A stretch of 64,000 nucleotides of DNA, from assembly GCA_964247055.1 (NCBI GenBank), contig OZ176053.1, positions 4,712,001-4,776,000 on the forward strand, given 5' to 3'. Under the pieces are notes generated by a model. It searched no databases, was not told the origin of the DNA, and was given only the letters and a program-made list of their open reading frames with translations. Numbering within the stretch: the stretch's first letter is position 1; every line of letters begins with the position of its first letter. Of this stretch, positions 34,201-59,551 are shown one piece after another. The translations under genes and the position numbers were made by a program. Source of the DNA: Paragordius varius (taxonomy: Eukaryota; Animalia; Nematomorpha).

Positions 34201-37200
34201 ACCGTGGACAAAAAAATACAATCAAAAAAATATTTTTGTGGACTTTGTTTTTTTGAAAAAAATGGCATTTTACGGGGGGAGCGGGTAAAAAGAGGGCCTA
34301 AATCAAAAAAGTGACTCGACTATGTTCAGCGCGATCAAAATTAAGTAAACAAAATTCATATTTGAAATTGAATGGTCCAACACGTTCTCCAAAAAATTGA
34401 CTTAACCCATTTTTCACACGGGGTGGGCCCGAACTGGGGACCTAATTCCAAAAAAGGGCGAAGCTATTGTCGGGGCATTCATTAATGTTTATATTTTTTC
34501 GATATTTGGATTTGATTGGGATCACCGGTTTTCCGGAAACAGTTCACAAAGTTATATGAAAAATCAGTTTTTAGCGGGTAGCTCCTTACCCAGCAGCTAT
34601 CATCAAATAAACGGTGGACTAAAATTTTTGCCTTTTAACAGGGAATACGTGGAATCTTTATTGAATTTTTAAGGTCTCATACCTAGGACGAAAAATCGAT
34701 TTAAAAAATTATTTTTGTGGACTTTGTTTTTTGAAAAAAATGGCATTTTACGGGGGGAGCGGGTAAAAAGAGGGCCTAAATCAAAAAAGTGGCTCGACTA
34801 TGTTCGGCGCAATCGAAAATAAGTAAACAAAAATCATATTTGAAATTGAATGGTCCAACACGTTCTCCGGAAAATTGTCTCAAAAACACGATTTTGTGGA
34901 CTTCTGTTTTCAAAAAAAACCCGTTTTTCATACGGGGTGGGCCCGAACTGGGGGCCTATTTCAAAAAAAGGGCGAAGCTATTGTCGGGACATTTATTAAT
35001 GATTATATTTTTTCGATATTTGGATTTGATTGGGTCTACCGGTTTTCCTGTACCAGATCACAAAGCCAGCATTTTCCATTTTTATAAATATATAGATTAT
35101 TTAAATTCAGTCCGTAATATATCAATTTTATAATTTAGTTGTTCGTACCTTTTGAAAAGATTATGGTGAATTCTAAAAACTCTTTGAAAGATATTCGGCC
35201 GTTTTTGTCTTTATCCACGAGGGTGAACATATTTTTGACGAAAGTCGATGATTCTTTTAACGCTAATGCTTCGGCAAATTCTTGGGGAGTCAGTTCGCAC
35301 TGTAATAATCGTTTTAATTTGGTTTGTAACGTTTTACCTCTGTTTAAATGTAAAAAATTATTTTGTAATGATCAACATTTTGAGTTAGATTATTAGGTTT
35401 ATTATTTAATATTACTGCTTTTCACTGATTTGTTTAATTCCCCTTTGGTTGTCATATGTCGTTTCTTGATTAGATCCAATGGACGTATTTAAAGAACATT
35501 TTTTTACTGTGAAAATTCGCTTCACTTTTCGACATATATTGTATTTGGCATATCTTGAAATTATGGAATCCATTGCATAGTTTTCTAAATTTTGGTCATC
35601 GTCTACCTCGTTTGTTAAGATTTGATCCACGTTAAAGTTTTCATCAAATGCCTAAATTAAATATATAATAAGTAAGCATTTAAAAGTAGTGTTTTCTTTG
35701 AGAAAACTTGACAATTTCTATATTAAATAATATTAATACAGTTTTTTTAAACCTCATAAATCTTATTTTTCCAATTAACATGGTTAGTAATATTATATTT
35801 GTAGGATCATATTTAGTTTGGACTTAAATGGCCAAACATTAACAAAAATTGGTTATTGTATTATTATATTCGCCTTTATCAATTATTTTATATAAATATG
35901 GTAAAAGATCAACGCAATAATAGACAAATTAGTTTTTAGCAAAAATTAAATTACTAATGAGAAGGCTGTCTTGAAGAACATATCCAATTGTTTAACTCTA
36001 TCCTTACGAGTAAAAGCGATTTCGAACAAAAGTTTTCGCGAACTGACTTCGTGCTGGAACAAATGGGTGCCGGACACATCAGAAAATTGTTGGATTTCAT
36101 TTTGAAAATTGAGGAATGACGTTTTGTCATGAAAGTGCAAAATCTAAAATGAAGAAAATTAAAGGGCTTAATAAAAAAGAATTGACAAATCTTGATCTTA
36201 AGTTACCAGACTTATTTAATACTTTAATTTTGGGATCATTTAATTTCCATGATCGAATATAAATATTATATATTTAAAAATATAATAATTTATTTTTGGT
36301 ATCAAGACAATTGGTTTTGAGAATTTGAATTTAACCAAATTAATTTTTCAATGAACCCAAAACCAAAACTTAATGTCACAATGGTCACAATGATTTGACC
36401 ACAAATCAAAAGGTAGAGAATTCCTTCAAACGTTAGAAATTTAAAGGGGAACAAATATTTGAGTGGCTACTGACATACAACTACCTACCCCAACCTTTAT
36501 TGTGTACAACAGAAAAAAACATGTTGATCCAAATTTTCCATGATATTTAATTTTTTGTCAACCATACACAATATAAAATAGGTTTAAAACATAAAATTTA
36601 TCTTACAAATTGTTTATAACAGTTTTTATAGTATTTGAGACGATCATATTATTATCACAAAATATTAAAATAGTATGTAATATTTAATTGTAAAATTCTT
36701 ACATGGTCATACTCTTTTGGAATTTTGAGAAGCAAATAAAAATGGTTAGACCGGTTCTCTTTGATTGTATAAACCTCAATATGCGAAAGTTGATCAAAGT
36801 TTATGACTCTTGTGTATGGTTCCCGGCGTTCGCCATACAGATTAATTGTAAAATTTTGTGGATTAAAACATATGACTATGGGAGAAAATTTATTTGTTTC
36901 CATCCATTCATCGGCTAAAACAAAACATTTTAGATAAAATACTTGTCAATGCTCAAATATTAGTTAAACATATCAATAAGTTAAAATACCGTTAAACCTA
37001 AAATTTACCTTTGAGCAATTCAAATTCACCATAAAAATAAAATATTGTTTTTTGGCAAATCCTTATTGATATAAATTTTTCGTTTATAGTTTATTTTTAA
37101 ACAAAACTTTATTTTTAAAATCATCCAAAAACGTAATTTATTTTTAGGGTGAGTGTTTAAAATGTTTAAGAGTAAATTTAATATGTTCAATGGTTAAATG

Positions 37201-37411: not shown

Positions 37412-40400
37412 TTTAATGTTATTGTACAATACTTACCAGATATATTAGCATCTCTACACTTTATGCGCGGCCGGCACTCCATAAACTTAAGAGCAGTTTT
37501 TTCTCGTTTTCTTGCCATAACATACATGATCATTAGTGTGCCTATTTAAAAATGCATATAATTGAAGTTTCAATAATGCGACATGTTATTTAATTATATC
37601 TTAAATAATTCAATATATATTTTAAAAGGTTTATGCAAATATATGCAATATAATAATAATTTTAAAATTACCCAAAATAACTAATCCCAACAAGAAAAAG
37701 GATAAAATGAACGATATCTCACTTCCCTCAAAATAGTCTATAATGTAAGTCGGTTGACATTGTTCGATTGTATCAGGTTTGCCCAAAACTGGGTCATTGA
37801 TAAATTCTTTAAATAAAAATATTATCATTGTTAAAATATTTTTTAACAAGGGTACGTAGAGTATAAATAACAGTCTTTGTAAGTTAAAAACATCATCTAA
37901 AAATTTATAGCAAACAATGCATTTATACCCGAAACAAATGGATTTTTTTGGATTGCTTTTCTAGTTATACGAGTCGTTTTTAGTATAATATCACGCATAC
38001 TCAAACTTTGAATAGCTTTATATTCGGATTCAGTGAATAACCTAAATATTTTTGTACGGGTAAAATGTAACTCTATAATAGAAAATAAATATTCTCATTA
38101 ATTTTTACCCATTTTGGCGGTAGTTTTCGAACCAAAATCTATCACCATCTCTAATGCGCAAAAAATTGTTTAATATTATGGTTTGAAGCAATGGTCCAAT
38201 TGAATTCGTACCATTTATTTCCGCTAAACTGCCCGTTATGGCATCAATAAACTCTCCGTTCTAGATGGATAATAAACATTTTTCGAACAATATTGACAGT
38301 TGTTATAATCATATAAATTTAGGACTTCAGTTTGATCAGTTTAAACGTATTTTTTAAATTTTTTAAACACATGATAATAAAGCAATAATTATTGTGTGTC
38401 ACTTATTCATTTTGCCATTTTTTTAAGATAGTTACGTAACAAATAAGAAATAAAAAATTATTTGTGGGAATACCTAAATAGCTAAAGCTTTGGCTTTAAA
38501 TTTAGTTTTACCCTTAAAGATCAGACATTTAGCTTAAATTTTGCCGGCTTATGAAAGCAAATTAAGATTTTATTTCACGATTTTATCATTTTGACATGCT
38601 ATATGGATTTGCATTTACATTCAAATCATTTGACAATTCCGACCCAAAATATTGAAAATAAAATATATTTTCTTTAGATTTCGAGTCATACTAAGAAACA
38701 TATAAAGTTAGTTTATTAAAGATGACACGTTATAACCTGACGGCCATTTTCAAGGGGCAACCCTAATTGTCTTGATAACTCATGGTAGCCTGTCACACCC
38801 ATGTCCATAGATTTTACCAATTGTTGGACAATATAATCAGTTTGAGACAAACCATTACCTTTGCCATAAAATCTTTCTAAGCATATTTTTGAAAAAATAT
38901 TTTATTTAAATTTTTTGGTTACATGGTGTCTGTAAAAGAAATATTATAAATATTTTTTATTAAAGCGTCAAGAGATGAATCAGTTGGGTTCGGTCTAACG
39001 GTTATAAATGCAATATGCTTCACTGCGGTCACTTATAAAAAAATATTAAAAATTTTGAACATACGTTTATCATGTAAGTTAATATAAAATAATTGCACAA
39101 ATTTAATTTAAAGTTAATTAATCGTAGAATATTGAACATCGGTTTTTATTTGTCGTTTAGATTGTTAGCTATTAAAAGCAATTAATCAATATTAATCATT
39201 TTCAATTTTTTTATAAATCGCTGCTCTGTTTGTTAAATTACACTTTAAAGGTTAATAAACGAATATTTAAACTTGTTTCATAAATTAAATTAATACCATG
39301 CCTTTCATGTCTGGAACTACGAGAAGGTCTTCAGCTAACCCATTTTGTTTGACCATTCCCATGATAATTGAATCAACAGATAGTTTTTGAAATTTTTCAG
39401 TGGCCCAGAATGAGTTACACAGTCGTAAATAAGTACTTTTTGAATTCTCACTATGGTATTTAATTAAAATAACCCCTTATACATAATTAAAACTTTATTA
39501 AAACAGGGTAAAAAATTTACTTTTTTGTAATTATTAATGATGGGACCATGGAAGCCAAGTAGGTGGGCACAATAGCGGAAAACTCAATGCTAATAGCTGG
39601 GTCAATATGTGGATTGTAACCTAGGCGTTAAAATTACATAATTAAATACGCAATTTTTTTAGTTGTTCTCGCTATAATATTATAAAAATATTATAAACAT
39701 CAATATTGAGTAAATTATAACATAAAAATAGATATCCAAATGTATCGCAATTTTATCCTATAAACTCTTATATTTGATAGCAGAAACGTAAATCGCGGTT
39801 TATGCTGGAGCGGGTTTTTTTACTATTTTGAATTTTTTACATAACTCCTATTTTAAGGAAAAATAGTATGGAATAACACTATAGTTTTTTTTAGTATTTT
39901 TCATTTTAGATCATAAAAAAATGTTTTAGATTTTGTTATTTGACGATAAATTTTAAACTGAATATACGGTAGTTTATGTTATTTTTTATAGATTTTATTG
40001 AAAGTTTATAGCTATTACTGCAATAATTAAATTTTAATACCATGTCTCAATGCTAATTAAAAACCTTGATAATCTGGAATAAGCTTGGCGGGGGCATTTA
40101 GCATAACCGGTAACCATTCGTACAAAACTATTTTCTAAATTTGTGCATAAATATTTGTCCAATATAAAAAATACTATTAAAGATACGTGAAATTTTAGTA
40201 TTAAGTATTATTTGTAGTTAAATAATAATTTGCGCTTCAACATAAACTAAATATCTACGTCATAGTAATATTACAGTTGTCCGCCAGAATTAAATAGAGT
40301 TTTTGTGGATTTTATCCATATCCGCAAAAATTAATACAAAATTCTTAGAGTTTCTTCGTGGTCCAACAACTGATTTTGTATAAAAATTAAAAGATTTATA

Positions 40401-43400
40401 TTAGTTTTTATTTAAAGAAATTACAATCTTGAAAAGAATAGCGATTAATGAATAGTGTAGGATAAAAAAAGCAATTTACAGGTAATAAATATTTACAATA
40501 TGTCGTGATAATGATTTAATTAAAAGAAGTAGATTTATAATAAGATATGAAATTACCTAAAATGGTTGGATTGTTCATTTATTTACCCTAATCCAAACGG
40601 TGAAACAAACTTAACTTAATTTCTTACGTTTTCCATAATTTTTATAGAAATAGAAATGACCGTAAATGTTAGTCATAACGTCTCAATTTATCATATAAAA
40701 TATTTATATAGATAGTATCATGAAAATAGCATATGTGAATGGGAAGGCAAGAGTTTAATCATTCTCATAGTTTTATAATTAAGGGGCATCGGACAGACTT
40801 GGTTTATTTGAAAGAATGTTTAATATTATAATAAGTTGCTTTTTTTGAAAGAAAAGGCGACTCAGGGTTTCAGGCTGGACCTCGAAATGTACACCAAACC
40901 ACCAGGTTGAACATATAAGACATTTATTTTTGCACGTGCAAAATGTTTAATTTATTTGAACTTTTCCTATCCTTGTATCAAATTAATCAAGATTTGTCAA
41001 AAGTTAAAAATTAATATAATTTGCAAATCAAACATTACATTATTACACCAATATATTCGTCACGACAAATAACCCTAACCATGGTGGAATTATTTGATTC
41101 GGACACCCCGGCAATATATTAAAATTGAAATAAATATGATTCAAAAAATTATAATTCATTACTTGGTAAGAAGCAATGGTCCATTTCCTAGCTTCGTTGA
41201 AAATCCATTCATCGGGCCACGTTGGATTAACCAAATATATTTGATTAGCCAAATAATTATGCCATCGAAACCAGATAATCGAACTTGTAATCAGCAAAGG
41301 AGATTCATTGTTTCTTTCGTCACCAAATACTACGGTTATGAACACATATTATTTTAATTCGATTTGAATGCTTATATGATTTAATACAAATACTTTCAAG
41401 TTGTTAAAAAACATCAATCGGCATTAAATTTGGATTGGATTAGATGAAAATTATACTATATGAGCTTGTTAATTTTTTATTAGGCTCTAAAATAAACTTT
41501 TAAATTGGTTAAGTATGCTAAATCGTTATTTATTAATGATGGATATATAAATTTACCAAATAGCCGTTTAAACGAATTTTCATAGGGATTATTGGTTGAT
41601 GGCATATTTTTCATGGGCAAACCATCCAAGTTTAGGGATGGATAACTTTCATTACCCGCAAAAAGCCAATTGCGATCCGCTTGAAGCGTTTTAAGCTGTC
41701 CTTGCTTAAATGTCCGTAAAAAATTGCTCCAAACATTTGTTGAGCCATAAATGGAACTCCCGTCGAGAAACGAAGTGACATGATTCAACTAAATTTTCAA
41801 GAAGCATAAAGAATGAAAATAAATAGCGTACAACTTATGCAAAATAATTGATCAGATAAATTTTTCTATGTGATTTTAATCCTGCTAATTTCTTGCAAAT
41901 ATAATTTAGTAATACAGTAGACTAACGCCCTTAAAGAGACACCGTTCTTGATCCTTTTTAATAAAAAGTGCTCTAAACCAATTAGCTCATGCTGATCATG
42001 CACAATTCTGATTTTTAAATAAGGTCTTAATTTTTGGGTTAAATCATTAATAGAGCACATACTTCCACGAACTAACTGAATATTATGTAAGCCTCATGAG
42101 TCTTGAAATAATAAAAATATTATTTGGAATTATTTTTTAATCTTTTTTTAAATATCTTTATAATTTTATAAATTAGGTATTATTAAATAATAATTAGTTT
42201 TTAACCAAAAATGTCAATACAGTAACCACATTAATGATGGCCAATTTAATGAAATCGTAGCGTATGATATTAAACAAAGTTTCCCCAAAATTAAAATTTA
42301 GTGTGGTAGGATAGGAAATTCTGATTTCAACCATTTTTCACCTATATGCCCTGCATTTTCAATGAGCCAAAAATAATGTGAATTTACCAACTTTGATGTG
42401 CATATTGTATAAATATATCCTAAATAAGGTCATGATGTGTATGATGACTCATGTATTTTAATTGGGTCATTAAGGGTAAGGAGGTCCATACTAGGTCTTT
42501 TTGGCCTACTCGATCAAATATAAATACAGATAAAAAATTACGGGTGTTCTAACTGATTGAAATGTTTTCCCAGTATTTGGATCAAAATTGATGCGCTTAA
42601 AAATTCCGTAAAATTTATCCGAATATTTCCTCGGTCCAATTTTGTAAGCATTAAAATAATCCTCCGGCATTTCTACTTTGAACATTTCTCGTGGACAAGC
42701 TGGTTCGTCCGCGTGTAGAATTTCGTTTAAAATGTGCAGTCCTAAAAATATAATTACATCCATTTAATTTCTTCAGTATGTACAATTTTTTTGTAAGATG
42801 CTGGTTATTTAATGTGTTTCGCATAATAGTGTACCGGTGATAAAAAAATTTAAATTGGTTAGTATTTAAAATTTTAACAAAAGGAGAAATAATATTTTCG
42901 GACAATGCCTGAAAACACATACATTTTTTAGAGATAATTAAAGATAATCAGTAATATTTTTGTACGGTTTTTATTTTTACTCAAATTTATAAAGTATGCT
43001 TGAGATATTTGTTCATATTATAGTGTGTTACATCGAATCCTAACAACTAGAGCTGGATATTCCACATCTAATTTTAATTCTATCTAGTTAATACTTTTTT
43101 AGCAATATAATTTTTTAGAAATTTAATCTCTGGGACAAAAAAATACCCAAATGGTATTCTTCAAATAATTTATGCGTAAAAACATGTTAAGGGTGAATAT
43201 AAAATTTTAACCGGTGAAAATGATATTCAAGGGTAGAGTTGTTATTTTCTACCAAAGTGTATAAAATGTTCTTAAATATTTTTTAATACAAAATTTCAAA
43301 GCCATATTCCTATTTTAAATTATCTAATCTGCTTTTAATAAGCTTTTGATACTTAACATATAAAATAATAATACCCATCGCTACGAACCAAACCGATTTA

Positions 43401-46400
43401 TTATTTCGTGAAAGTTGGTAAGTGTCCGAAGTACTGCCAGCATATAATTTTAGACTCAGTTCATATGGATTATTAGGTTCATTTGATTGGATAATAAAAG
43501 GGATTTCATAAGGCAAATCATTTTCATCGTTAATACGTGCTAATGTAGTTCTAACCAAATGGGAATCTAAGCAATAACATTTATAAGGTTCATTGAATGG
43601 TTTTGATTTGCTATTTATACTTATTAAGCAAATAAAGCGCAATCGTATAACCATTCGTAAGTATGTGGTCTGGTCTAATCTTCTGCAAAGCATTCAATTT
43701 TTTATTCCATATTGAAGTCAGTTAAAGTTTAGCAAACGGACGGTCTGATGGTTAAAGTGATATTATTTCTTTATATAGCAGGTGTATTTATAAGTTATTA
43801 CCGGTTTACCTAAGAGAAGGCGTCAGAAAAAGTAGGCAGACGATTAATTTGATGCATACACCATTTGGTTCATTGACATTAAACGCTAAAAACACACAAG
43901 TTGAAATTAGCGACTTATTATTATGATTTATTAATCATGTCGAATTTTGTGCCTGAAGAGGAACATTTGAGGCAGCCATTAAAAGAAAAAAGCTGTTGAA
44001 AGTTATCTTTTACGGGAAGAAATATGGGGTAATACACTCGATTAACACATGTAAAGGAGGTTTCAAAATATTAAAAAATAGTGTATAAAAGGGTGGGGCG
44101 CTCTGATAAAACTGCGAAGACGCTAGAGTGCAATTGTTAATGATGACCCAACTCAAACATAACAAGTTGGCAAAAACAATCAATAGATGTCTACAAGCAA
44201 TGAGAAATATAAACACACTCGGTAAATAATTTGTATGAACGTCTAATCAAAAATCGCAAAGTGACTTGGGAAATCCTGCTTCGTCATGAAAAGATATCAT
44301 TTTTGTATCGAACTTGTAGGAGTAATGAGTAATGGCTATTATTTTGTAAATCCAAAGCGGTAAAATAGTGGCCTTCATAGCCAAGCCGTCCATCCACAAT
44401 ATGGCCAAACTTCCAAGAAAAACATACTCTGTGTCTTGTGGGACCATAGCGGCATTGTGTATTAAAAAATTTTGAAGTGAACTTGTTGATACACAACATT
44501 AGCGCTAAAACTTAATTAGAACCATCGTCATTCGAAAAACAACCGGAATGCGCCAGAAAACATGGGCAATGCCTGGTCCACAGAAAAACAGTGAAAGACA
44601 CCTCAAAATGACTTCGATAGGAATTTTTTCCACATTCGCTTACCTAGCGCCATCAGACTAATTCAAACTCGCATCAATGGGGCAAACCCGCGCAAAACAC
44701 CACTTTAATAAATTTATAAGTTTAATGGTTTGCCGCAACAATCAATCAGTTTTTTGCCCGGCATTCATATATTACCCGAGGGCGGAGTGAAATGTGTAGA
44801 AGCCGATACATTAAAAAAAATTAATTTTCTTTCAAAATTACATGTGGTTTTACCAAAAAAACCGATAAAATTTTTTAAATACACCTGGTATGTATTTATA
44901 AACATCCAAAAATTTATAGAATCCCATATATTTTATTCTTGTCCATAAACCAAAATATAAATGGATCAATGAAAGGATTACTCACAGAACCGCTATATAA
45001 TAATTATTTGTAAAATTTTGAAATTAAATCATTTATACTATCGTTTTAAAAAAATTATTGGTGGTAAAATAAAGGCAAAAAATATTTCATAAATCATACC
45101 TACACTTCCGTAATCAGGTGAAGCTAAATTATTATACCAACCATTGTATCCTGGACACTCAATCGATAGAGGATGGATTTTACTTTTTCCGATTATGCTT
45201 TCTATGTCTGTGAAAATAATTAATTTGTATATTATTAGCATATTTAATGATTTTATTTTATTGAAATTTTATTGACTTAAATTGATTAAAACAACCTTAA
45301 AAGTAATTACCTTTACGATATTAGTGTAATAATTGTTGTATCTAACATATTAATATTTCAAAGGAGAGGTAAAAAATACGTGGAAATAAACTATTACTCA
45401 AATTCTTGGAAAAAGTTAAGGATGATTATTTATTAATAAATTATCTTTACCTAAATGATACATTTATTTACTAAATAATTTCTGACAATAAGTTTTTTTC
45501 GTATGCATGTTTAGGAATTATTATTTTTTATTAAATATTAATTTTATATCGAATAATATCATTATTGTGATAAATCGATACCTTCTACACATATTTTGTC
45601 AATATCCTAAATTTTGAGGCTAAATCGTAAATAACACATCATTAAAACGGATATATTAACAGTGTTTACATTATTACGTCCTAACCATCCTTCATGGTAA
45701 AAAAACGATGAGTAATACAAGAATGACCTTCGCTTCGTTTACTTACTCACTTACTTCCTTTAAACATATATATACATTAGAGAGGATACTTTAGTTTTAA
45801 ATGTTCACTTTAAAAAATGGATTAATAAATGGTTGTTTTCAAAATGATTAAGAGGAAAGCAAACACTTGTAAATACTTAACTCGAATCAATATTAGTTAA
45901 CATCGTTGACTTTGTTACTTTGTATTTGCATAAATGTAACACGAAATGGCAAAAGTCGTAATAATAATAATAATAATAATTAAAAAATTAAAACCATACT
46001 AGCTAGCTAGCTAGACACATAATTTTTTTTGTCCGTTATTTAATGATGACCTTCTTATGAAACGTAAAAGATGTTCAATGTTAAAAAACAAGATAATTAC
46101 TGTGCACCACCAACCAATTATCAATTAATTGTTGTGGTCTTAAAGTAAATAATTTTCATAATTTTACCAATAACGGAAAATCTTTAAATCTATTAAACCC
46201 TAAAATAGTTTAAAATGGTTCAGAAAAAATTAAAATTGATTTTTTAACTCTTTTTTATCAAGGTTGTCTATGTTTATTGTCAACTAACTTAACGTTACTA
46301 AGTCAAAGCATTTATAAAACGCTTGAATAATACTGATACATAAAACATTATATAATCAATCAAATACAAAATATTTATTAATATTATGACTATGAAAGAA

Positions 46401-47540: not shown

Positions 47541-50500
47541 GAATCATACAAATTATATATCTATACACGAATATATAAGAAATTTGTATTTGTCAAAAAA
47601 CAACTATCTGTTAGTTTCAATTTTTAATTAATAACTAGAATTAAAAAAATAAAAAATTATATATAGATAGAATCCATTACTTTATATGTATATATATATA
47701 TATATAAACATATATGCGTAATAATATTATTCATAATGTGACAATATTACTAATAAGAAATACATATATTTTGTTCTTTTATAATAACTCATTATTGTAC
47801 AAAAAATTTATAATTATTAGAAAGCGTATATATATACTTTATCAATATCATTATTCATATCATATCACTATTTCCTCTTTCTAAAATCGCAAAAATCTAA
47901 ATTTTGGCAGGCAGTTCATTCGGACACTTTCCCATAATAAAATATATTTTTTTTATTTCAGAATTAATATACATAACAAAAAAATAGATTTGACAAAAAT
48001 TATAAAAATGTGCCATAAAATGTTGTTAAAATAGAACGAAATATAAAATATCTTTCAACATGAATATTTAGCTTGAAGCTTTTTTCGGAGATACTGATAG
48101 GGAGTGTGTCAAAACTTAAATAATGGAAAATATTTAATATTAGCACAATTATTATACGTTAAAAATATTTTATTATTTTTTTAAATAAATTACTCTTAAA
48201 TAAATATCAAATATTATTTAAATTTTTTTCATTGAAAATTTGTAGGAAAAAATTAAATTTTAAATTTATCTTTTAAATTATGTATATTTCATCCAAAATA
48301 AAGTGGTTCAACAAATGGTGTGCAATTACTACACTTTTAATTATTTTACAATATATTTTAATTAATAATTTGTTATAATTTAACAAGAAATTATTCAGTA
48401 AACTAGGAATATAAATATTTTAAGTAGTTGAAAAATTAAATTTAATTTTACTAATAATATTCCAACTTTTTTCCGATGCATTTTTTTATTTATTCTGGAT
48501 ATTACTTAAATCTAATTTGAAAAAAGCGACAATAGCTTGGTGTCAATTTTAAAACTAAACCAATCAATAATAGCAATTTTTATTTTAACGCATTTACCTA
48601 CTTGATGTAGTAAATGGGTAGAAATCAATAAAGTCAAATCAATTATCCCACATATTGCTTAAGAATAAATTATAAATAAATCTAAATAAACATATAATCA
48701 ATTATAAATTTTGGTTTAAGAAGTTTATTAACTCAGAAAAAATATATTAATATTTAACCGAATTAAAGACCCTTAGTAAACCTAAAAATTTGTTTGGGGG
48801 TTTCTAAATATATTTATTTATATGCATCTCTATGGATGGGGCATATATCAAGTTCGACATTTAGGAATGCTGTAAATAAAACCTACCCATCTATTGCGGT
48901 CGTTCGAATACTTCCAAGATTAAATTGGTTTTAAAATTTTCATTTTTTGTCATATAATACATATACAGAAGCCCGAATATAACCATAAAAATATATCCTA
49001 TAATTATTGTATCCTACGTTTAAATTGAATCTAAGCTAGTGTCAAAAAAATAGAAATCGTATTCAAAACGCTATGATAAAAATTAAATATTTTTGGAATT
49101 ATTAGAAACAGCTGTTTCGGTTCTGGAAATAGTTTTTGTCTATCAATGAAAGAATAATATGGTTATTCCAACAAACGGTTTTAATTCGATCCCCTGTATC
49201 CAAAAAGAAATATTTTTAAAAAATAATAAAAACGTAAAATTGAATAAAATTGCTCTTGATAAAATGCCATCATAAATTTTTTTTATAATCTGTGTTAGTA
49301 TAATGAACTAATTTATGTTATAATATATAAATAAAATTATGGCATATTAGAATATTTAAAAAGTATTATTTGGTGATCATCAGTATGCAATTTGTTTGCT
49401 CAGAGCATATTAATTTGGAATCAAATTCCTCATGTTAGATTAAAATTTTTATTAACTTGAATTTTATTTTAAATCTCCTTATTTACAGCGATGCATGATA
49501 GGGTGTATCAGCTTAAAAAGATCTAATTGACGCACAATTCAGGAACAATACAGAGCTGTTAAACATATCTCTTTGCAATTGGATTAGTGAATGTTGACTT
49601 TAAAAAAATTACTAGGAAAACATAAAATTCGAATTTTTATTTTATAAATGCGCTGGAAATACTAGGGCAATCTATATAAATTTAATTAAATCCTACCCGT
49701 TTGAAAATCGGGGAAAAATAGTCTTTAAAAATCGTGTCATTTTTCCGTAAAACGTGTTTCCAAATTCAACGATATTTTTTTTACCAATCCGAACATAGTC
49801 GTATTTTTTTGAATTAGTCACCGTATTTAAAAATGAATTTTTAATGTAAGTTTTCAGTTATAAGACTATGTAAAATCAATAGTGATTTAATGCAATAGCA
49901 GTATAAAGGCAAAAATTATAGCCAACTTAATTGAATTAGCCGCTGGGTCATACTTTTTCTAAAATGTGCAATGGTTTTAAATTAAGTTGGCTTTGAGGCA
50001 ATTTTTAAACCCAAATAAAATTCAAACGGGAATTTATGTATAAACAATAATTTTTGATAAAATACAAATAATATTAAATCTATTCAATTAAAATTGTATG
50101 AAAATAGAATCTCGCCAAATTATACTAAGATTTGATTTAGGTATTAAATGCAAATTTTGTTCAGAGTCTTTATTTGATGAGCCGATGGGGGGGTCCACCC
50201 TCTGTAAAATGCGTTAATTGGTTTGGAGAAGCATTTCGGACTATGAGTTTATATGGAATTAATAATGGTTTTAGGTGTTTCCCGCAAAGGCGAAACAATA
50301 ATAGTCACGGACTTTTAAAATCAAACTTACGGTCGGGTTACAACTTATCTTTAAATCTACTACTTTATAAAAACGTGTTGAAGTATATTTGGAACATCTA
50401 TGAGGCTTTATTTAAAGAAATTAATGGTTTTTCCCGTGTAAAGGCAAAAATTATAGTGTAAAACAATATAATGTTTTTAATCATGCTTCTATAGATCATA

Positions 50501-51134
50501 GCTAATTAACATTTTAAACTTTAAGTAGAACCCTCGGCGCTTTTAAAAGTGTCACTTTTTCAGGAAACGTGTGATACAGCTATGGTCTTACAGATTTCTT
50601 TCAGTACACCGATCCTAAAGGGGTGGGTATTTTAACATTTGCTTTAATGTCTAACTCCTTGTGATATAAAATCACGGTTTTGAAATATACATTGATTGTG
50701 AGTCGCAAATAAAAATATTTCGCATGCTGGCCGAGAATACGTAAAAGCCTGTGTCACAAAGTGTCCTGTAAAACCCTGTCACTACAAAATATTATATTAT
50801 CAAAAATTATAATGTTCCGATATGAATGGGGTCATTCAAATTTAGTAGTACTTTTATTATAAATGTGCAAGAGTATTCAAGCCACTTTTTCATTGCGATT
50901 TTTGTCCTGAATTCTTTATATTGAATTAAAACTAGAAATTTGTAGATCGCATTAAAATTGGACAAATGAATACTTAAATGATGGTAAAGCGAAAATCATA
51001 ATATTGTTATTTACAATCCGTATCCTACTGAACAGAAAATGTTTCTTATGCAAAATTACTGCTTAAAAATTTATTATAGTGTTTAATTTTATTACATTTA
51101 TTCTCCGAGATAAAAAAACTTAATGAATTATTAA

Positions 51135-51699
51135 CACTTGGATGCAACACACTCATTTTAGTCCTTCGATTCAAATTGGGGTAGTTGGATACCCCAGGCC
51201 TGTTTAAAATCAAATACTTTAAAAAGTATGGAAGCCAGCAAAACCATGACAAAATTTTGCACTTATATAACATTAATAAACCGAAATATATAAAAAATTT
51301 TATTCAAAAATACTTGATATTACTTATTTTGAGCTAAAACTGAAAATTAGTCATGTCACATGTTTCAAATTGTAAAATTAAAAAATTATACAAAATAAAC
51401 CGCTTTTTCTATTTCTATCAATGTTAGATGTAATTTATATAAAAAACAAGCTTGAGTTTTACCAAAATTAAATAAAGACGATATTTTGCAAAATTTTTAC
51501 AAAATAAAAATGGCGTCGAAGTAGTTTGAGATGGAACTTTTTTTTCAAAACAAAATTTTATCATGTAGGCATATTTATATAATATTTATCAGGTTAGAAG
51601 CATAAATTTGAATTGGGACCGTTTCCTTCAGTAGTTTTTTAAAAATTATAATTTAAATTTAGTCTGGGGTATTTAGATACCCCAATTTGAATCGAAGTG
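51135..51699 (+). mobile_element. piggyBac-type MITE, copy 2, about 300 bp upstream of the SARA start codon
   Basis: TTAA flanks at 51131-51134 and 51700-51703. Same termini and internal sequence as 5887-6464. Confidence 0.85.
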
Positions 51700-52001
51700 T
51701 TAAGGCAATAAATTAATATACATCCATTGATGAAAGATATAGATATTTTTTATAATAACATTACCGAATGCGGTTAAATATAATTATTTTAGCAAACGAT
51801 TTTAAATTTAAAGATATGCCCAAGTTTAAATAAAAAATATGAGGTAATAGAAATATTTACACAATTTATTAAAAAAGTTGCTTTGAGTTTTAAGAAAAAT
51901 CTTTAATTATAATCTAATTTTCTCTCTCAGAGTTATTAGTTGGTGTGTTTTTATGTGTTTATTATTGTTATAAAATATATGGTTTGATGCACTCTTTTTA
52001 A

Positions 52002-55000
52002 ATGGACCACGATGGTACATCGGAATCTCACAGGTTAAATTCAATGCTTGGTTATGTTCGGCCTTATTGGATTCCTGATGAAGAAACAGATTCCTGTATG
52101 TACTGCGATCAAAAGTTTACTTTAGTTAGAAGACGTCATCATTGTCGAGCTTGTGGAAAAGTTTTTAATTGTTATATTGTTAGATATTATGTGCATTTTG
52201 TTGTAACAAGAAAATGATCTTACCATCCATGAATTTTAAAATGTCCAGAGTTTGTCTCGCTTGTTATCATCTTTTAGAAAATGACAAAGGTATAATATAT
52301 TTAATATAATAGATTTCTCAATTTTATCAAATCTATACTCCGATGAAAATTTAAATACTAAGATGAATGGTATTCATCCTGATCCCACCAAACCTGAACA
52401 ATATTGTTCAACTATACCTCCATTTATGCAAGCCAAAAATACCGCAAATAACATCCCTGTTGTATATGTCCCTACCAGCATATTAAAAAGTATGTAAAAT
52501 ATTTTTATATCATTAAAAATGTTATTTTTATAGATGGCAAAAGCAATTCAAACAAGGTTTATAATCATACTATTGAACATGGCTTCTTAACCTCGAATTC
52601 CGACATTGAAACAGCTCAATCTGCCGAAACCCAATTGTTTGAAGCTAATGTTACAGTTAATGGCGATGGCTCCGAAAATCAGCAACAACACCGTAAAGAT
52701 ACGACAGCTAAAAAGAGTGTCATTTTTGCCGATGGTATAAGACCAGGAGGGGATTTGAGTTTGGAATCAGACAATTCATTTAAATATTCTTCGACATCGT
52801 CGTCTTCAAACCTGTTTAGAAAGAAACACTTAATTTCCTCATCTTCATCGTTATCCTCCTCGTCAGGTAAAGCAAGACAAGCCTCAATAATGGTCATTCC
52901 TGCCGTTGCTCACATTCCTCCAGCCATCCTTAAGTTTGTAACACCGTCCAACAATTTGTTATTTTCACCTCAACAAGCGTCAGACGATAATAGTAAAACT
53001 AATGTGACTGAACCATCACATGATAGATGGATATCACCCACATGCACCCTATTTATCTGCTCAAATCTCAGGCTTATCTCTCATCTTAGCTATGAATGTA
53101 GTAAGAATATTGTTTATATTTAATATTAGGACGAATAATTAATAGTTTTGTAATATGAAGGCAAAATATGGAGTTTATAGGCTTCTTTATACTCGTTAGT
53201 TGGGGTATTGGTGTTGATATATTAATTTTGGACAATCCAATTTGTTTTCTAAGACATGTGTACATATGTATTATCTTTTTAACAAATTTATCTGAAAGAA
53301 TCAATCACAAATATTTGTCTTAATAGTATTATAAATATGTTTTCTAAGTTTTATTTCTAATTTAGTATATTCTTATTTTATATTTAATTTTATATATAAC
53401 ATTCCACAAATATTAATTGTAATAATCGAAATTCATGCTTTAAATAAATTCCATTATTGCTGAATTTGAATAATTCCCAATTTTAACCTATAATTGCAGT
53501 TATAGTTTTTATTATTTTAATTTGGTTTTCTATAAATTACAATTATATAAGAATGTTTAATATAGGTTTGTGCAATTTAGTTTACCTTTATTTGCGTTTC
53601 GCATACGTATCATCATGTAAAACATGTAATTTAATAATTAAAACTAATGGTTTTTAGTTACGCCAAAGGTTTTTTAGTTAATTGTTTGATAGATTTGTTT
53701 TCCTCCTTTCGTACAGGTACACACATGGCGCAATACCTACATTTACGCACTAATGGTATGAAGGGAGTTGGAATGTCAGAACTTTCCTGTATCATAGACC
53801 TCTCAGCTAATCAAAATTACGCTAGCAAAGAATCTCTGGAATCCATTATTTATGATTTTGGATATCAATTCTATCGCATTTATGTTGACTCACTACATGG
53901 TATGTGCGGCATTTATTTCTTGGACTCTCTTATTTAATTTATAGTATGCACATTTTTATTGGCTCACATTATTTTTGGCTAATTGGCAATACCAATAGCG
54001 TATGGGTAAAAACAACAAATGGCTTAAACTAAACATTTTTTTCCTATCTTACAACATTAAATTTGTTTATTTATTTAGGAAAAATTTATTTTATATTTTA
54101 CTCTACTGTATCACCAATTAGCCAATAATAATAGGAATTAAACTGTATTGGTGTTAATTTTTCGGATTTCTTTTGATTCCTATAAACGATTATTTTTCCG
54201 AAATATTTTATGCAATAATGAGTGAAATATAGTTAATTTTTATAAAGTAGTTGTTTAAATCATTTTTAATTTTGGATTAATGCTCATATATATATTATTT
54301 TAACCATCTTTTAATCAATTCTTGCAGGTAAAAATTTTAGTGCCCTTGATTACATTTCAATGTATAAACGTGGTCCACCCCTACAAAACACAAATTCGTC
54401 TGAATCAAACTCTCAAAGTTCTTCCTCAGCAGAATTATCCTCATCTTCTAATATCAACACATTGTCATCATCCAGTACAAATATGAGAAATTCTTTCCTA
54501 TACGATTCTTGTATGTCAGGATTCCTGTTAATAAATTTGCCCCATCCTTCATTCGTACAAGCAAACACTAATTATCGAAGTCTTGTTTGTGAACATTTTT
54601 ATCACTATAGCAGCAATGTATCCAACAGCAATAATAATATTAATGATTCAAAAGAATGTCTAAACAATGCTAATGCTAAAATGTTTCATACCAAAACACC
54701 AAATATGTACATTGAACCTCCGCGTCTTTACTCCTTACTTATACACAAATGGGAAGTTTCTTGGGCACATTTACTACCTGCCAGGTTGCTTTACCGCCTT
54801 GGATATGAATTTTCATGTAAGAATGCGCACAAATACTTTATATTATATATCATTTTAATTCGTAAAACACCGCTATCAAGGTTTTTTCTCTCTCATTTTT
54901 GTTTACTAATGATTTTAAATTATTTTTTTCGGCTTTGGTAAATTTAGTTTGTGAAAAAAATTTTTTTATTCAAAGCTTATTTGCGTTTTTAAAACAGAAT

Positions 55001-58000
55001 TATTTAATACATAGTTATAATCTAATTTATTAACAGGGTCATTTATTGGTAAAAAATCATATTTGTTAAAATTATTATAAGTATTTTTAAGTTTTTAATA
55101 ATCTAATATTGCGACGGCTTTTTAGGTGCGCCGATATATTTTAAGGTATTAAAAATATACATATGAATTTTTCGATCAAATTCATATATAAATTACATGG
55201 CATTCTTTCAAATTTTATGATTTTTTTAACCTTATATTTCATACACTTTAAAAGATTTCCCCTATCCCATTGTTTCTTCCCTGGATAGAAAATCGACATT
55301 TTTTGAGCTCAATCACACCATAATGAATCTGTTGGCCGATTGTAAAAATTTTAAATACACGCTAACACGAATATCCGGTCTTAACATATTGTATGATCCC
55401 AAAAACTCTTCCATACGCATACTAATCCAAAATCAAGAACTTGAAGTAATCATTATTTTCTATTATACATTTTTTTAATCAAATGCAAAATTTCAATTGC
55501 GTTTAAACTGGAAAAAAAATATTTTGTGTAAAGTGAAAAAATTTGTTTTTGTGTGGGGCCTGTGATAAAAATATTAAAGTGTTGTTTTTGTTAAAAAGGG
55601 ATGATATATCAAAATTACAAGGTTTAGTATACATTGTATAGAGTTATCTTAAAATTGGAAGAATTTTATAAAAATATATTTTATGATGTCCTTTCCTTTT
55701 TCCGAAATTTAATAAAAAACATCATTTCTACAAGAAAGTAATTTAAAAATTTAATAAATTTAAATGATATACTTTTTTTTGCTATAGGACATAGATTCTC
55801 TTATCACATCATTTCGTATTAGTGACCATGTTTTAGCGTTTGCCAGTGATATATGTCGGCCCCCGGCTAATTCTGTCCATGCATGTATACAACACGATGA
55901 GGATTTTGATGTTTTATCCAACACCACCACCAATTATTCTAATGGTATAATGGCTGGTGATAATGGCAATTTTTTACCAAAAAATGACAAATTTGATAAT
56001 GATGACTTAAAACATCAACACACTTTGCATGTTTGTTGCGAAAATGACAACACTTTTACATCACACAATGAACAGAAAGTTATAACATTAGATCAAAACA
56101 ATAAAACCTTGATTAATGGGGTGAATAATGTATTATCGGCGCCAGAAATAGGCGGGATTCATCAATCTTTTGTGCGAAAAGTTTTTACCAACACCGAAAA
56201 TACTATCATCGAAAAAGATGGTAAGATAGATTTATTTAATATGCACATATAATTTACAATTCGTATTCTTTGTTATGAATTGGAAGATGTTGTATTTTCA
56301 TGCACATTTTATAATTAACACGGTTATGTGGTCGATGTTTCCCGTTTAATGAATGGAAGATATTTTTCGAAAGTTTTGAACTTTAAACGTTTTAAGTTTT
56401 ACATTTTGGACTTTTTGATATGGGATGGAAGCCTGATACTGTAATGTTGAAAATTTATAAACTAAAGTCATGGTAGTAAATATGCAGTATGAGTAAATAT
56501 ACAATTTAGATTCGTATATTGAATAGCATATGCAGCGAGCATTATTATTGGTTAATAGCAGTAGAAAGGCGAAAAATTAAGTATAGGCCAATTATGCCCT
56601 TTGCCCTTTGACTTAGCTCACTTAATAATTGTTAAAAAAACAAGCATGTACAAATTTTAACTTGTGATATTTTTTATAATTATTTTTATTTATTACATAC
56701 TATGATGCTAGATTTAGTAATAAATGCAACCTTTATCGTTTTCAATGGCTCACTAAAAACTCATCCGAACCCAGCTATGAAATCAAGTTCTTCCAAACCA
56801 AAATTAACACCAAATACTACAAATATATCCAAGTAAAATAAAAAATATTGTTTTTTTCAATTAAAATATTCATCTTTTTTTAATTAAAATTTTTATATAT
56901 AACAAAATAGTCAAACACATTTTGAAAACGATACATTTGAAACGAAGAATATCACAAAAAATTCAATGTTTATTGAAGATGACATAAAAATAACTCAAGT
57001 TGAGGATGGTTTGATGGTACATGTTAATCCTAACACTATAACAGAAATTACACAGGCACTTACGAAAAGGATTGATTTTATTATTGGGTAAAATTTTTTG
57101 CGACAGCATTTATAATAACAAATCAAATGTACAGTTTGCAAAATTTTATATATCTATATCTCTCTCCCAACTTTATAATAATATTTATGATATTATTGTT
57201 GGATTTAAAGGTTTATTGGATTATTGTGGTTGAAAATTGAGAAAACATTTTGAGAGTTTTTAAATTCAATAAAGTTTAAAGCAATAATTAAAATTTATAT
57301 TCATAATAGGTGTATTATTATTTACAAATTTCATGTTTTATGTTAATCGGATGTATATTTACCGTTAATTTTTGGCAATAATTTTTAACTTTATGAACCA
57401 AATTGATCATTCATAACCATAGATCCAAACCAATTAAAAACACGGTAATTAATGTCACGAAAAAATCTCCAAATACATCCCTTAAAGCAGATATTTTACC
57501 CAAAAATGAAACAAGCAAACCAATTCCAAGCCAAAAATCGATTGTTGACGTTGATAGTTTGTCTTTACCGCCAAATACAACTAATTCGCCACATTTAAAT
57601 GAATTAATGCAAGCTTTTAGTATAACAAACACAACGTTAGAGAGTCCCCAATGGTCCTACGATGATGATTATTACGTTGAAAATAGTTTTCAAAATTATT
57701 GCAATAAACCAAAAATGGAAAAGGAAAGCAAAAAAGATACCAACACAAATGTGAATCTCCAAGCAATGCGGGTAATGTTATATATGTTTATTAATTTACG
57801 TCAAAGCAAAATCAAATAATTAAAGTGAATATTGTCAAAAGTCATTTGTTTATTACCGCTAGTTTTTGATGATTTTATTTGAAAAATGATGCTTTTAGAT
57901 AACTTTTAAGTAGTATATACAAAAATTTAGATTTTGGATTTTATGTAATTTGCAATATCAATTTTAGTTGAACAAGTTACAGATGCAACTGCATTAGATT

Positions 58001-59551
58001 ATAAAAATAGCCCAAGTGATAAAACTACTGCAAACAAACATCAATCATTACACAATGTAGAAACGGTCTCTTTTAAATGGTCCGATTTGTCGCACGATGA
58101 ACAAAGTGATAAACTATGCAATAAAAATACTAACGAAACATTATTTACCAAATTTATTGGGTAATCCTTACAAAATATAATTTTATTTGAATTATTATTT
58201 TATAATTTAATTTTAAAATGAAATATATTCATTTAAAATTATTTTATATAAAACCTTAGAAAAAATGTTAGTTTGATTGATGGACAATCTCTTGAACATT
58301 CAGTCAACTTTAAACCACGTGGTTTTATGATGGATTATTTAAACAAAGATTTGTACATACGCTTAGTTGAAATATATTACTTACAAATGGATGCATTAAT
58401 TACATCAAAGTAAAAATAAAAAATACCATTATATTTTGTGGAGAAATATAGAATAATTAAGTCCCTATATTATTTTATAAATTCAAGTATAGCAAGACTT
58501 AAAATATCAATATTTTGTCATTCGCCCTAATTAAGAAAACGTAATGAAGTGTGTAAATCTTTGATTCCATTTTACTTCCTGTTTTTAATCTTATTAGTAA
58601 TCATCGGCTTATTGCTCTGATTGATTTTTTACATTTTTAATATGTTTTGCCATACTTTTGCGATTGAAACACATATTTAATTTATCGGTTTCGCCCTGCT
58701 TCCAGAAACTTTTTATTGCAAAAACAAAAGTTTTATTGAGATTGTTCACAAAATTACTCTTTTCTATATTGCCCCCAAAAAATATTATTTTTCCAATAAT
58801 ATACTTACAGAACGGATATGGATGTTGAAATCGCTGCTCAAGACTTATCTCAAGCCTTTTGTGAATGTCTGGTTAATCGTTTACATTTGGTCGCAAGTGC
58901 CGGAATATCTCAAATAAATCTTCGCATCACCATAGATGCAAATAATGTAACACAACCCTCTATTCATTTTTTTATCTTTTAATCCAATCATGTTATATGT
59001 TTGTGTGAATTAGATTAAATTTATCGAAATAAGGGAATGTTTTGAGGTTTAGATTCTATTTTTTCACTCATTTCATTGTGAAATAATAACTTGTTAAAAA
59101 TAAAAATTTAAGAAAATGTAGTTTCGTGTACACATTTTTTGAAAATAAGTTTTACTTTTTATGTTACTATCAATATATTATTCATCCCCTTTAAAGGATG
59201 GTAAAGAATTATTTGGTTTTCAAAGGAAAAATATATACCATTATATTTTTTATGCATTGATAGCAATGATTATATTTTTATATAATCATATAACTTTTTC
59301 TTGGTATCCAGGTTGGATACGAAGTTAGTTCACTCGGAGCAATATATGAACAAAGTTATATGGGGGAACTTGATGATTACCTCATACCCATTATTCATGC
59401 AACATTACATAATTATGGAGCACCCTTGTTAGATTTGGCTGATGAGAGGAATGATACAACTACCCTTCGAACTAATAAAAAAATGAAATTCAGTACCATA
59501 AATCCGGATGCACTTATCCTTGAACTCGTTTTCCACATACTAAAAATGTAG
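52002..59551 (+). CDS. ZFYVE9: SARA/endofin-family FYVE protein (FYVE zinc finger, Smad-binding motif, PP1-binding motif, conserved C-terminal region), 16 exons, about 1230 aa
   Basis: Exons: 52002-52160, 52184-52289, 52313-52489, 52534-53100, 53717 (or 53693)-53899, 54328-54816, 55255-55445, 55788-56220, 56712-56832, 56911-57087, 57423-57771, 57914-57944, 57968-58160, 58260-58409, 58811-58946, 59312-59551; all in frame. Motifs: [38 protein letters not shown]...RVCLAC; [15 protein letters not shown] (Smad-binding domain); KSVIFADG; [20 protein letters not shown]; HTIMNLLAD; VEDGLMV; LIDGQSL; ELVFHIL. ZFYVE9 vs ZFYVE16 cannot be resolved; invertebrates usually have one Sara gene. Confidence 0.93.
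52161..52183 (+). other. 23-nt GT-AG intron inside the FYVE domain
   Basis: GTTTTTAATTGTTATATTGTTAG. Removing it joins CRACGK to ILCAFCC and restores zinc ligands 5-8. If retained, the frame ends at TGA 52215-52217. Confidence 0.85.
52290..52312 (+). other. 23-nt GT-AG intron between the FYVE and Smad-binding exons
   Basis: GTATAATATATTTAATATAATAG. It contains an in-frame TAA. Removing it gives an open frame into [15 protein letters not shown]. The next AG (52362) is out of frame. Confidence 0.8.
57945..57967 (+). other. Probable third 23-nt GT-AG intron
   Basis: GTAATTTGCAATATCAATTTTAG. It links a 31-nt exon (57914-57944, [10 protein letters not shown]) to exon 57968-58160 in phase 1. A weaker alternative (donor at 57800) exists. 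Confidence 0.6.

What the first reader, a model, noticed from the sequence alone, without database searches (positions are those of the whole stretch)
52161..52312. Two consecutive spliceosomal-type introns of exactly 23 nt in an animal gene
Seen: the FYVE domain is split after CRACGK by GTTTTTAATTGTTATATTGTTAG, and its second half (ILCAFCC...RVCLAC) is preceded by an in-frame TAG, so only this 23-nt GT-AG removal yields an intact zinc finger. 106 nt later, GTATAATATATTTAATATAATAG (also 23 nt) must be removed to reach the Smad-binding motif. Both lengths are 3n+2 and retention gives a premature stop. The two share length but not sequence, which argues against a random assembly deletion. Other introns here are 44, 46, 67-130 nt and up to 15.7 kb. 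Established: introns under about 30 nt are typical of ciliates, nucleomorphs, microsporidia and dicyemids, not of animals that also carry multi-kb introns. Inference: this lineage may have a separate fixed-length tiny-intron class, needing a modified spliceosome geometry, alongside conventional introns.
Basis: partly seen in the sequence, partly recalled or inferred. Interest (0 to 1): 0.88.

Follow-up and report, generated by a model that had tools for sequence, protein, structure and literature searches.

The report
Two real 23-base introns, hairworm SARA
A signalling-adaptor gene (SARA/endofin type) of an AT-rich worm genome, most likely a horsehair worm's, is interrupted by two introns of only 23 bases that sit exactly where a related hairworm has introns of 3.6 and 10.7 kilobases and where a snail and a crustacean also have introns, so they are very probably genuine, extremely shrunken introns, although no RNA could be found to show the cutting.

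Summary
Segments 52161-52183 and 52290-52312 are each 23 nt and run GT..AG. Leaving either in gives a stop codon.

Removing both joins the gene exactly. Exon 1 matches FYVE profile positions 1-32 and exon 2 positions 33-66. In the endofin FYVE structure 3T7L they match residues 6-44 and 45-74. Exon 3 is the complete Smad-binding motif.

The main new evidence is comparative:
- The only close relative found, ZFYVE9-like of Gordionus sp. m, has introns at the same two codon positions and phases. They are 3,621 and 10,734 nt long.
- Lottia (319 and 737 nt) and Darwinula (376 and 623 nt) have introns at the first position exactly, and at the second in the same phase two codons earlier.

An independent DNA contig carries both 23-nt segments without a gap. 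Its 35 listed exonic variants are strongly enriched for synonymous changes (20 of 35 against 21% expected). This argues against a collapsed assembly and against a pseudogene.

No RNA covers the locus, so the cutting itself is inferred. The "fixed length" and "modified spliceosome" ideas are untested.

Published animal cases under 30 nt are myxobolids and Dicyema only. This scan has already noted the same intron class many times elsewhere in this genome.

The parts
52002..52160 (+). SARA/endofin-like gene, first coding exon seen (ATG to ...[11 protein letters not shown]). It encodes the first half of the FYVE zinc finger.
   Evidence: Pfam FYVE profile 1-32/67, E 3.8e-13. 3T7L residues 6-44. 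72% identical to Gordionus P0007 residues 170-219. An in-frame TAA lies directly upstream, so further 5' exons are possible but were not found.
52161..52183 (+). Tiny intron 1: 23 nt, GT..AG, phase 0, 17% GC.
   Evidence: Sequence. The same codon position and phase is an intron in Gordionus (3,621 nt), Lottia (319 nt) and Darwinula (376 nt). Present without a gap in the DNA contig of run X1.
52184..52289 (+). Exon 2, 106 nt. It encodes the second half of the FYVE finger (ILCAFCC...RVCLAC...ENDK plus 1 nt).
   Evidence: Pfam FYVE 33-66/67. 3T7L residues 45-74. The Gordionus exon 2 is also 106 nt and 76% identical. It is 100 nt in Lottia and Darwinula.
52290..52312 (+). Tiny intron 2: 23 nt, GT..AG, phase 1, 9% GC.
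   Evidence: Sequence. Gordionus has a 10,734-nt phase-1 intron at the same codon (ENDI|DFS against ENDK|DFS). Lottia (737 nt) and Darwinula (623 nt) have phase-1 introns two codons earlier in the alignment. No gap in the X1 contig.
52313..52489 (+). Exon 3, encoding the Smad-binding motif ([18 protein letters not shown]...VYVPTSILK).
   Evidence: Pfam SARA 1-39/39, E 6e-9. PDB 1DEV chain B residues 3-39. Gordionus P0005 was hit with this exon alone.
52490..52533 (+). Intron 3: 44 nt, GT..AG, phase 1.
   Evidence: Sequence. Same position and phase as Gordionus intron 3, which is 1,231 nt.
52534..59551 (+). Rest of the gene. Exon 4 (52534-53100) carries ...[13 protein letters not shown]. Later exons carry the SARA_C domain. 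Introns 4 to 7 are 616, 428, 438 and 342 nt, with more downstream. The stop is at 59549-59551.
   Evidence: Pfam SARA_C on 54330-54818 and 55323-55445. tblastn of Gordionus P0007. My exon model and its translations. Boundaries downstream of 56220 are only approximate.

Best explanation
The two 23-nt segments are genuine U2-type (GT-AG) spliceosomal introns of a functional SARA/endofin (ZFYVE9/16-like) gene. The genome is probably that of a nematomorph (horsehair worm) other than Gordionus montsenyensis.

Both are old bilaterian introns flanking the 100/106-nt exon that encodes the second half of the FYVE finger. In this lineage they are only 23 nt, whereas in Gordionus the same two introns are kilobases long.

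Shown:
- the sequence anatomy;
- exact restoration of the FYVE domain and the link to the Smad-binding motif;
- orthology of position and phase in three other animals;
- presence in independent DNA;
- purifying selection on the spliced frame.

Inferred: the pre-mRNA is cut at exactly these GT and AG by the ordinary major spliceosome working by intron definition. No branch point could be assigned.
For: (1) Domain continuity. FYVE profile positions 1-32 then 33-66, and 3T7L residues 6-44 then 45-74, across intron 1. Exon 3 is the complete SARA Smad-binding domain.

(2) The Gordionus RefSeq protein reads ...CRACGK|ILCANCC... and ...LLENDI|DFSPS..., the same junction residues as predicted here.

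(3) An exact spliced mapping of that protein on its genome gives GT..AG introns at the same codons. Intron 1 is phase 0 and 3,621 nt. Intron 2 is phase 1 and 10,734 nt. Five further window introns are also positionally shared.

(4) Lottia and Darwinula have a phase-0 intron after CRACGK and a phase-1 intron after the FYVE domain.

(5) In DNA run X1, one 673-nt contig of depth 88 spans 51900-52564 with 0 gaps and 2 substitutions. Both substitutions are synonymous in the spliced frames.

(6) Of 35 listed exonic variants, 20 are synonymous against 21% expected (binomial P = 3e-6), with no stops.

(7) The intron bodies are 9-17% GC against 35% in the exons.
Against: There is no RNA evidence. RNA-labelled runs X6 and X8 had zero coverage over 51900-57899. 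No transcript-derived protein containing exon 3 from this species exists among 1.84 billion representatives.

The 5' splice site of intron 1 (GTTTTT) is weak, and no consistent branch-point motif is seen in the two introns.

Run X1 may come from the same project as the assembly, so its independence is limited to haplotype level.

One low-depth contig of run X5 diverges from the window exactly at the 3' end of intron 2. This is unexplained.
Confidence: 0.86

Rival explanations
1. The gene is a decaying pseudogene, and the two 23-nt segments are frameshifting insertions or leftovers that merely happen to start with GT and end with AG.
For: No transcript was found. The protein is only about 30-60% identical to Gordionus outside the domains.
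Against: Both segments lie at codon positions and phases that are introns in Gordionus, Lottia and Darwinula. All eight zinc-binding cysteines and the Smad-binding motif are intact. Variants are enriched for synonymous changes with no stops.
Confidence: 0.04
2. Assembly artefact: longer introns were collapsed to 23 nt in the assembly.
For: The genome is repeat-rich. Repeats inside other introns of the gene show depth spikes and haplotype indels.
Against: A Logan contig assembled independently from run X1 crosses both sites with 0 gaps, at normal depth (88, the sum of two haplotypes of about 48), and differs from the window by 2 SNPs. Two unrelated sequences of the same length are unlikely products of a collapse.
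Confidence: 0.03
3. The segments are real introns but are spliced inefficiently or conditionally. Retention, which gives a premature stop in both cases, would then serve as a brake on SARA expression, as reported for very short microsporidian introns.
For: The donor of intron 1 is weak (GTTTTT). Retention stops translation within 6-18 codons. PMC13644364 cites a median splicing efficiency of about 25% for microsporidian ultra-short introns.
Against: Nothing here measures efficiency. The gene is under purifying selection, so a useful share of transcripts must be spliced.
Confidence: 0.06
4. The segments are removed at the DNA level, like the internal eliminated sequences of ciliates or programmed DNA elimination, rather than from RNA.
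For: The size resembles the shortest ciliate eliminated sequences (my own knowledge, not tested).
Against: The ends are GT..AG, not TA..TA. The positions are orthologous to ordinary spliceosomal introns in three other animals. No joined form appeared among the listed joints of DNA runs X1 and X5 (table 5).
Confidence: 0.01

Closest known systems
Ultra-short introns of myxobolid myxozoans (Henneguya, Thelohanellus, Myxobolus; median 22-27 bp), PMC13644364
   Same: GT-AG introns under 30 nt in an animal, at conserved intron positions between conserved exons, AT-rich, in a parasite. That paper validated them by the same positional argument used here.
   Different: Those genomes are compact (20-200 Mb) and tiny introns are the median there. 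Here the same gene has introns of 44-616 nt, the neighbouring gene has one of about 15.7 kb, and the closest sequenced relative's genome is reported as about 64% repeats (Gordionus preprint 10.1101/2023.06.26.546503). The phylum is also different.
Ultra-short introns of the dicyemid Dicyema japonicum (as cited in PMC13644364)
   Same: An animal, a parasite, with introns under 30 nt and reduced splice-site motifs.
   Different: Dicyema has a compact genome in which most introns are tiny. Here the tiny introns are a minority beside long ones. Genome-wide statistics were not measured here.
Ciliate (Paramecium about 25 nt, Stentor 15-16 nt) and nucleomorph tiny introns (PMC5014332; PMC13644364; nucleomorphs from my own knowledge)
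   Same: Length range, and a length of 3n+2 with stop codons on retention.
   Different: Those are unicellular lineages in which essentially all introns are tiny. This is a bilaterian gene whose orthologous introns elsewhere are hundreds to thousands of bases long.
SARA / endofin (ZFYVE9 / ZFYVE16) gene family
   Same: FYVE finger, Smad-binding motif and SARA_C domain in the canonical order. The best solved-structure match is the endofin FYVE domain, 3T7L.
   Different: The N-terminal region seen is short (the first ATG lies 14 codons before the conserved NSMLGY). Linkers are low-complexity and N/S-rich. Identity to Gordionus outside the domains is only about 30-60%.

Membership tests
U2-type GT-AG spliceosomal intron | GT at the 5' end and AG at the 3' end | tested here: met
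   Both segments.
U2-type GT-AG spliceosomal intron | Removal restores an uninterrupted, homologous coding sequence, and retention breaks it | tested here: met
   FYVE 1-32 then 33-66. 3T7L residues 44 then 45. Junction residues are identical to Gordionus (GK|IL, END.|DFS). Stops follow retention after 18 and 6 codons.
U2-type GT-AG spliceosomal intron | Position and phase shared with introns of orthologous genes | tested here: met
   Gordionus matches exactly for both. Lottia and Darwinula match exactly for intron 1. For intron 2 they have the same phase, offset by a 2-codon indel.
U2-type GT-AG spliceosomal intron | Excision seen in RNA | not testable with these tools
   RNA-labelled runs X6 and X8 gave zero coverage.
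U2-type GT-AG spliceosomal intron | Branch point and polypyrimidine tract | tested here: inconclusive
   By eye, a yUnAy-like site has its A at position 8 of intron 1 and position 15 of intron 2. There is no common position and no real pyrimidine tract. Two introns are too few to judge.
Animal ultra-short (<30 nt) intron class | Length under 30 nt | tested here: met
   23 nt each. The same length is seen in the DNA contig of X1.
Animal ultra-short (<30 nt) intron class | A genome-wide peak of such lengths | not tested
   Only this 64-kb window was available. No other certain case lies in it: the Duox candidate 39451-39473 proved to be part of a 69-nt intron, and 57945-57967 is ambiguous. Earlier scan notes report many cases elsewhere, but these are unverified by me.
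SARA/endofin (ZFYVE9/16) proteins | FYVE domain, Smad-binding domain and SARA_C domain in that order | tested here: met
   Pfam PF01363, PF11409 and PF11979 on successive exons. The Gordionus orthologue is named ZFYVE9-like.
Ciliate-type internal eliminated sequence | TA..TA boundaries and absence from somatic DNA | tested here: not met
   The boundaries are GT..AG. No joined form appeared among the listed joints of the DNA runs.

The most novel reading that the evidence does not exclude
Horsehair worms of this lineage carry a numerous, discrete class of introns of about 23 nt. The class would have arisen by collapse of ancestral introns that remain kilobases long in a related genus. It exists inside a large, repeat-rich genome that keeps multi-kb introns.

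That would make them a third, independent animal lineage with introns under 30 nt, and the first in which intron miniaturisation is uncoupled from genome compaction. It would also mean that part of the reported low BUSCO scores and 'gene loss' in Nematomorpha is an annotation artefact, because gene finders skip such introns.
Probability: 0.45. Interest if true: 0.85.

Novelty: new member of a known kind. Interest (0 to 1): 0.72.

Why it matters
Introns under 30 nt were long thought to be absent from animals. The latest paper found (September 2026, PMC13644364) lists only myxobolid cnidarians and Dicyema, both with compact genomes, and links the trait to genome reduction.

Here, two such introns are tied by exact position and phase to orthologous introns of 3.6 and 10.7 kb in another hairworm, and to introns of 319-737 nt in a mollusc and a crustacean. 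That gives a clean natural experiment. The same intron differs in length by more than 150-fold to more than 450-fold within one phylum, in a genome that is not compact. The question of what sets minimal intron length then becomes directly testable.

There is also a practical side. Common gene finders and spliced aligners have minimum intron lengths above 23 nt. They would break genes like this one and could inflate apparent gene loss in this phylum.

Tried and rejected
1. RNA evidence. Both run searches showed the RNA-labelled runs holding none of the locus, and laying X6 and X8 gave zero depth. Nothing can be said about transcripts.

2. The search for homologous proteins with the read-through ORF 52002-52214 found nothing.

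3. A mechanical scan for other tiny GT..AG segments joining long open frames was too noisy in this AT-rich DNA.
- Its best-looking Duox candidate (39451-39473, 23 nt) is the tail of an ordinary 69-nt intron.
- 14807-14837 (31 nt) would insert non-homologous residues (judged from Duox sequence recalled from memory).

4. ENA and Logan proteins with 49-61% identity in the FYVE region (P0023, P0029, P0032, P0034, P0043, P0055) are from other, non-AT-rich animals and not from hairworms.

5. Alternative placements of a 23-nt deletion at intron 1 were considered. GKV|LC and GKVF|C would look even more like the FYVE consensus. I rejected them because they lack GT-AG ends and because Gordionus also reads GK|IL.

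6. Rfam found no RNA gene in the window.

7. The 30-letter loose end of the X5 contig is not elsewhere in the window.

8. The Sarcoptes orthologue has no introns in this region, so it is uninformative.

Full report
**What is in the sequence**

The window is about 27% GC. On the plus strand an ORF starts at ATG 52002 and encodes [53 protein letters not shown], ending at 52160.

- 52161-52183 follows: 23 nt, GTTTTTAATTGTTATATTGTTAG.
- Next comes a 106-nt exon, 52184-52289: [35 protein letters not shown] plus one base.
- 52290-52312 follows: 23 nt, GTATAATATATTTAATATAATAG.
- Exon 3 runs from 52313 to 52489.
- Retaining the first segment runs into TGA after 18 codons. Retaining the second runs into TAA after 6 codons.

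**Does removal give a sensible protein?**

Each exon was scanned on its own.
- Exon 1 matches Pfam FYVE profile positions 1-32 of 67.
- Exon 2 matches positions 33-66.
- Exon 3 matches the complete SARA Smad-binding domain, 1-39 of 39.
- Later exons match SARA_C.
- Against solved structures, exon 1 aligns to residues 6-44 of the endofin FYVE domain (3T7L) and exon 2 to residues 45-74. Exon 3 aligns to the SARA peptide of 1DEV.

The two halves abut to the residue. Other GT..AG pairs nearby that keep a frame would delete the CAFC zinc ligands. The gene is a SARA/endofin (ZFYVE9/16) orthologue.

**Comparative evidence, the main new result**

A search of 1.84 billion representative proteins with exon 3 alone gave one close relative. 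It is XP_065314015.1, "zinc finger FYVE domain-containing protein 9-like", from Gordionus sp. m RMFG-2023, a horsehair worm. That species' genome preprint gives a GC content of 26.93% and 63.8% repeats.

Its protein reads ...CRACGK ILCANCC... and ...LLENDI DFSPS..., the junction residues predicted here.

I fetched its locus (L001) and mapped the protein exactly onto the DNA.
- Gordionus intron 1 lies after CRACGK, phase 0, GT..AG, 3,621 nt.
- Gordionus exon 2 is also 106 nt.
- Gordionus intron 2 lies after ...ENDI plus one base, phase 1, 10,734 nt.
- Window introns 3 to 7 (44, 616, 428, 438 and 342 nt) also share position and phase with Gordionus introns 3, 5, 6, 7 and 9 (1,231, 680, 167, 72 and 956 nt).

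Two further orthologues were fetched and read.
- The mollusc Lottia has a phase-0 intron after CRACGK (319 nt), then a 100-nt exon, then a phase-1 intron (737 nt).
- The ostracod Darwinula has the same structure, with introns of 376 and 623 nt.
- The mite Sarcoptes has no introns here.

So both 23-nt segments occupy old bilaterian intron positions. This is hard to reconcile with random insertions or with a decayed gene.

**DNA reads and selection**

- In DNA run X1, one contig (673 nt, depth 88) spans 51900-52564 with no gap and two substitutions, 52094 C>A and 52247 A>C. Both are synonymous in the spliced frames.
- Over the ten exons I modelled, 20 of the 35 listed variants are synonymous. 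About 21% would be expected by chance (P = 3e-6). None creates a stop.
- The tiny introns are 17% and 9% GC, against 35% for the exons.
- These results argue against a collapsed assembly and against a pseudogene.
- Caveat: X1 may come from the same project as the assembly. The variants show it is at least another haplotype.

**What could not be shown**

- No RNA covers the locus. The RNA-labelled runs of the same species label held none of the sampled words and gave zero depth when laid.
- No transcript-derived protein with exon 3 from this species exists in the large protein library.
- Splicing at these exact sites is therefore inferred, not observed.
- I could not assign a branch point. The only yUnAy-like sites have their A at position 8 in intron 1 and position 15 in intron 2.
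- A low-depth contig of run X5 (another organism label) matches only from the AG of intron 2 onwards, with 255 unlike letters before it. Those letters are not in the window. This may be a longer intron 2 in a relative, or a chimeric contig.

Tiny introns coexisting with conventional and very long introns is supported within this window.
- The same gene has introns of 44-616 nt.
- The Duox gene on the minus strand has an intron of about 15.65 kb, between exons near 19484 and 35138, filled by a 478-bp tandem array.

"Fixed length" rests on two cases. A third 23-nt candidate in the same gene (57945-57967, next to a proposed 31-nt micro-exon) keeps the frame. However, 22 single-intron alternatives also do, and the region is not conserved.

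"Modified spliceosome geometry" was not tested. The myxozoan study found canonical U2 snRNA and U2AF alongside introns of 22-27 bp (PMC13644364), so no special machinery need be assumed.

**Comparison with what is known**

PMC13644364 (Mol Biol Evol, September 2026) states that animal introns under 30 bp are known only from Myxobolidae and Dicyema japonicum among 51 genomes examined. It mentions neither Nematomorpha nor Ecdysozoa. The Gordionus genome preprint and a Mermithidae/Nematomorpha comparative preprint do not contain the word "intron". In the library searched, I found no report of such introns in hairworms.

Earlier notes of this scan describe the same class (20-32 nt) at many other places in this genome, and one claims RNA support at another locus. 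I treated these as leads only. My locus-level test of positional orthology agrees with them.

**Verdict**

The two segments are very probably real, extremely short spliceosomal introns (confidence about 0.86). They are orthologous to kilobase introns in a related hairworm. This is a new animal lineage for a recently recognised kind of intron, in an unusually non-compact genomic setting. RNA confirmation and a genome-wide length histogram are the missing pieces.

Noticed in passing
window 57772-57967: A separate first-reader note (s1-267207) proposes a 31-nt micro-exon (57914-57944) followed by a third 23-nt GT..AG intron (57945-57967) in the same SARA gene. The reading keeps the frame, but 22 single-intron alternatives also do, and the region is not conserved with Gordionus. 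It is unresolved.
   Followed up: partly
window 52311 (run X5, table 7): A low-depth contig from a run labelled as another organism fits only from the AG of tiny intron 2 rightwards. Before that it carries 255 unlike letters, ending ...GGCGTAATTTC. That sequence is absent from the window. It could be a longer intron 2 in a relative or haplotype, or a chimeric contig.
   Followed up: partly
window 13250-47540, minus strand: A dual oxidase (Duox) gene. Peroxidase-domain exons lie at about 38100-45270, EF-hand exons at 35138-35371 and 19134-19484, and NADPH-oxidase exons at 13250-17940. One intron of about 15.65 kb holds the repeat array. Its introns that I checked are ordinary, for example 69 nt at 39451-39519.
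   Followed up: partly
window 20037-34800: A long array with uniform 35.5% GC, built of 478-bp and 182-bp tandem units, inside the Duox intron. Another scan note (s1-266996) calls it a Helitron concatemer.
   Followed up: no
window 5720-6025 (-) and 51046-51273 (-), also 6425-6646 (+): A repeated ORF family (MLYKCKIL...NRPGV.NYPNLNRRTKM...), probably a transposable element. Runs labelled as several other organisms hold 7-41% of the words of 50400-52400. This may reflect the repeat, or hairworm DNA in host samples.
   Followed up: no
window 51900-57899 (run X1): Run X1 shows two sets of contigs over much of the gene, each at depth about 48. One is identical to the window and one is several percent diverged with indels. 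They merge into one contig of depth 88 over the first exons. This points to very high heterozygosity or pooled individuals.
   Followed up: no
L001 (Gordionus OX940784.2, 12877814-12911853): The submitters' annotation of the Gordionus gene includes two partial models that break exactly at junction 2: CAK9295214.1 ends ...LLENDI and CAK9295213.1 starts FSPSN. The smallest introns of that gene are 46 and 72 nt, and none is under 30 nt.
   Followed up: yes
window 2927-9155, minus strand: An UNC93-like membrane protein gene with ordinary-sized introns at the one junction I looked at (between about 8735 and 8400).
   Followed up: no
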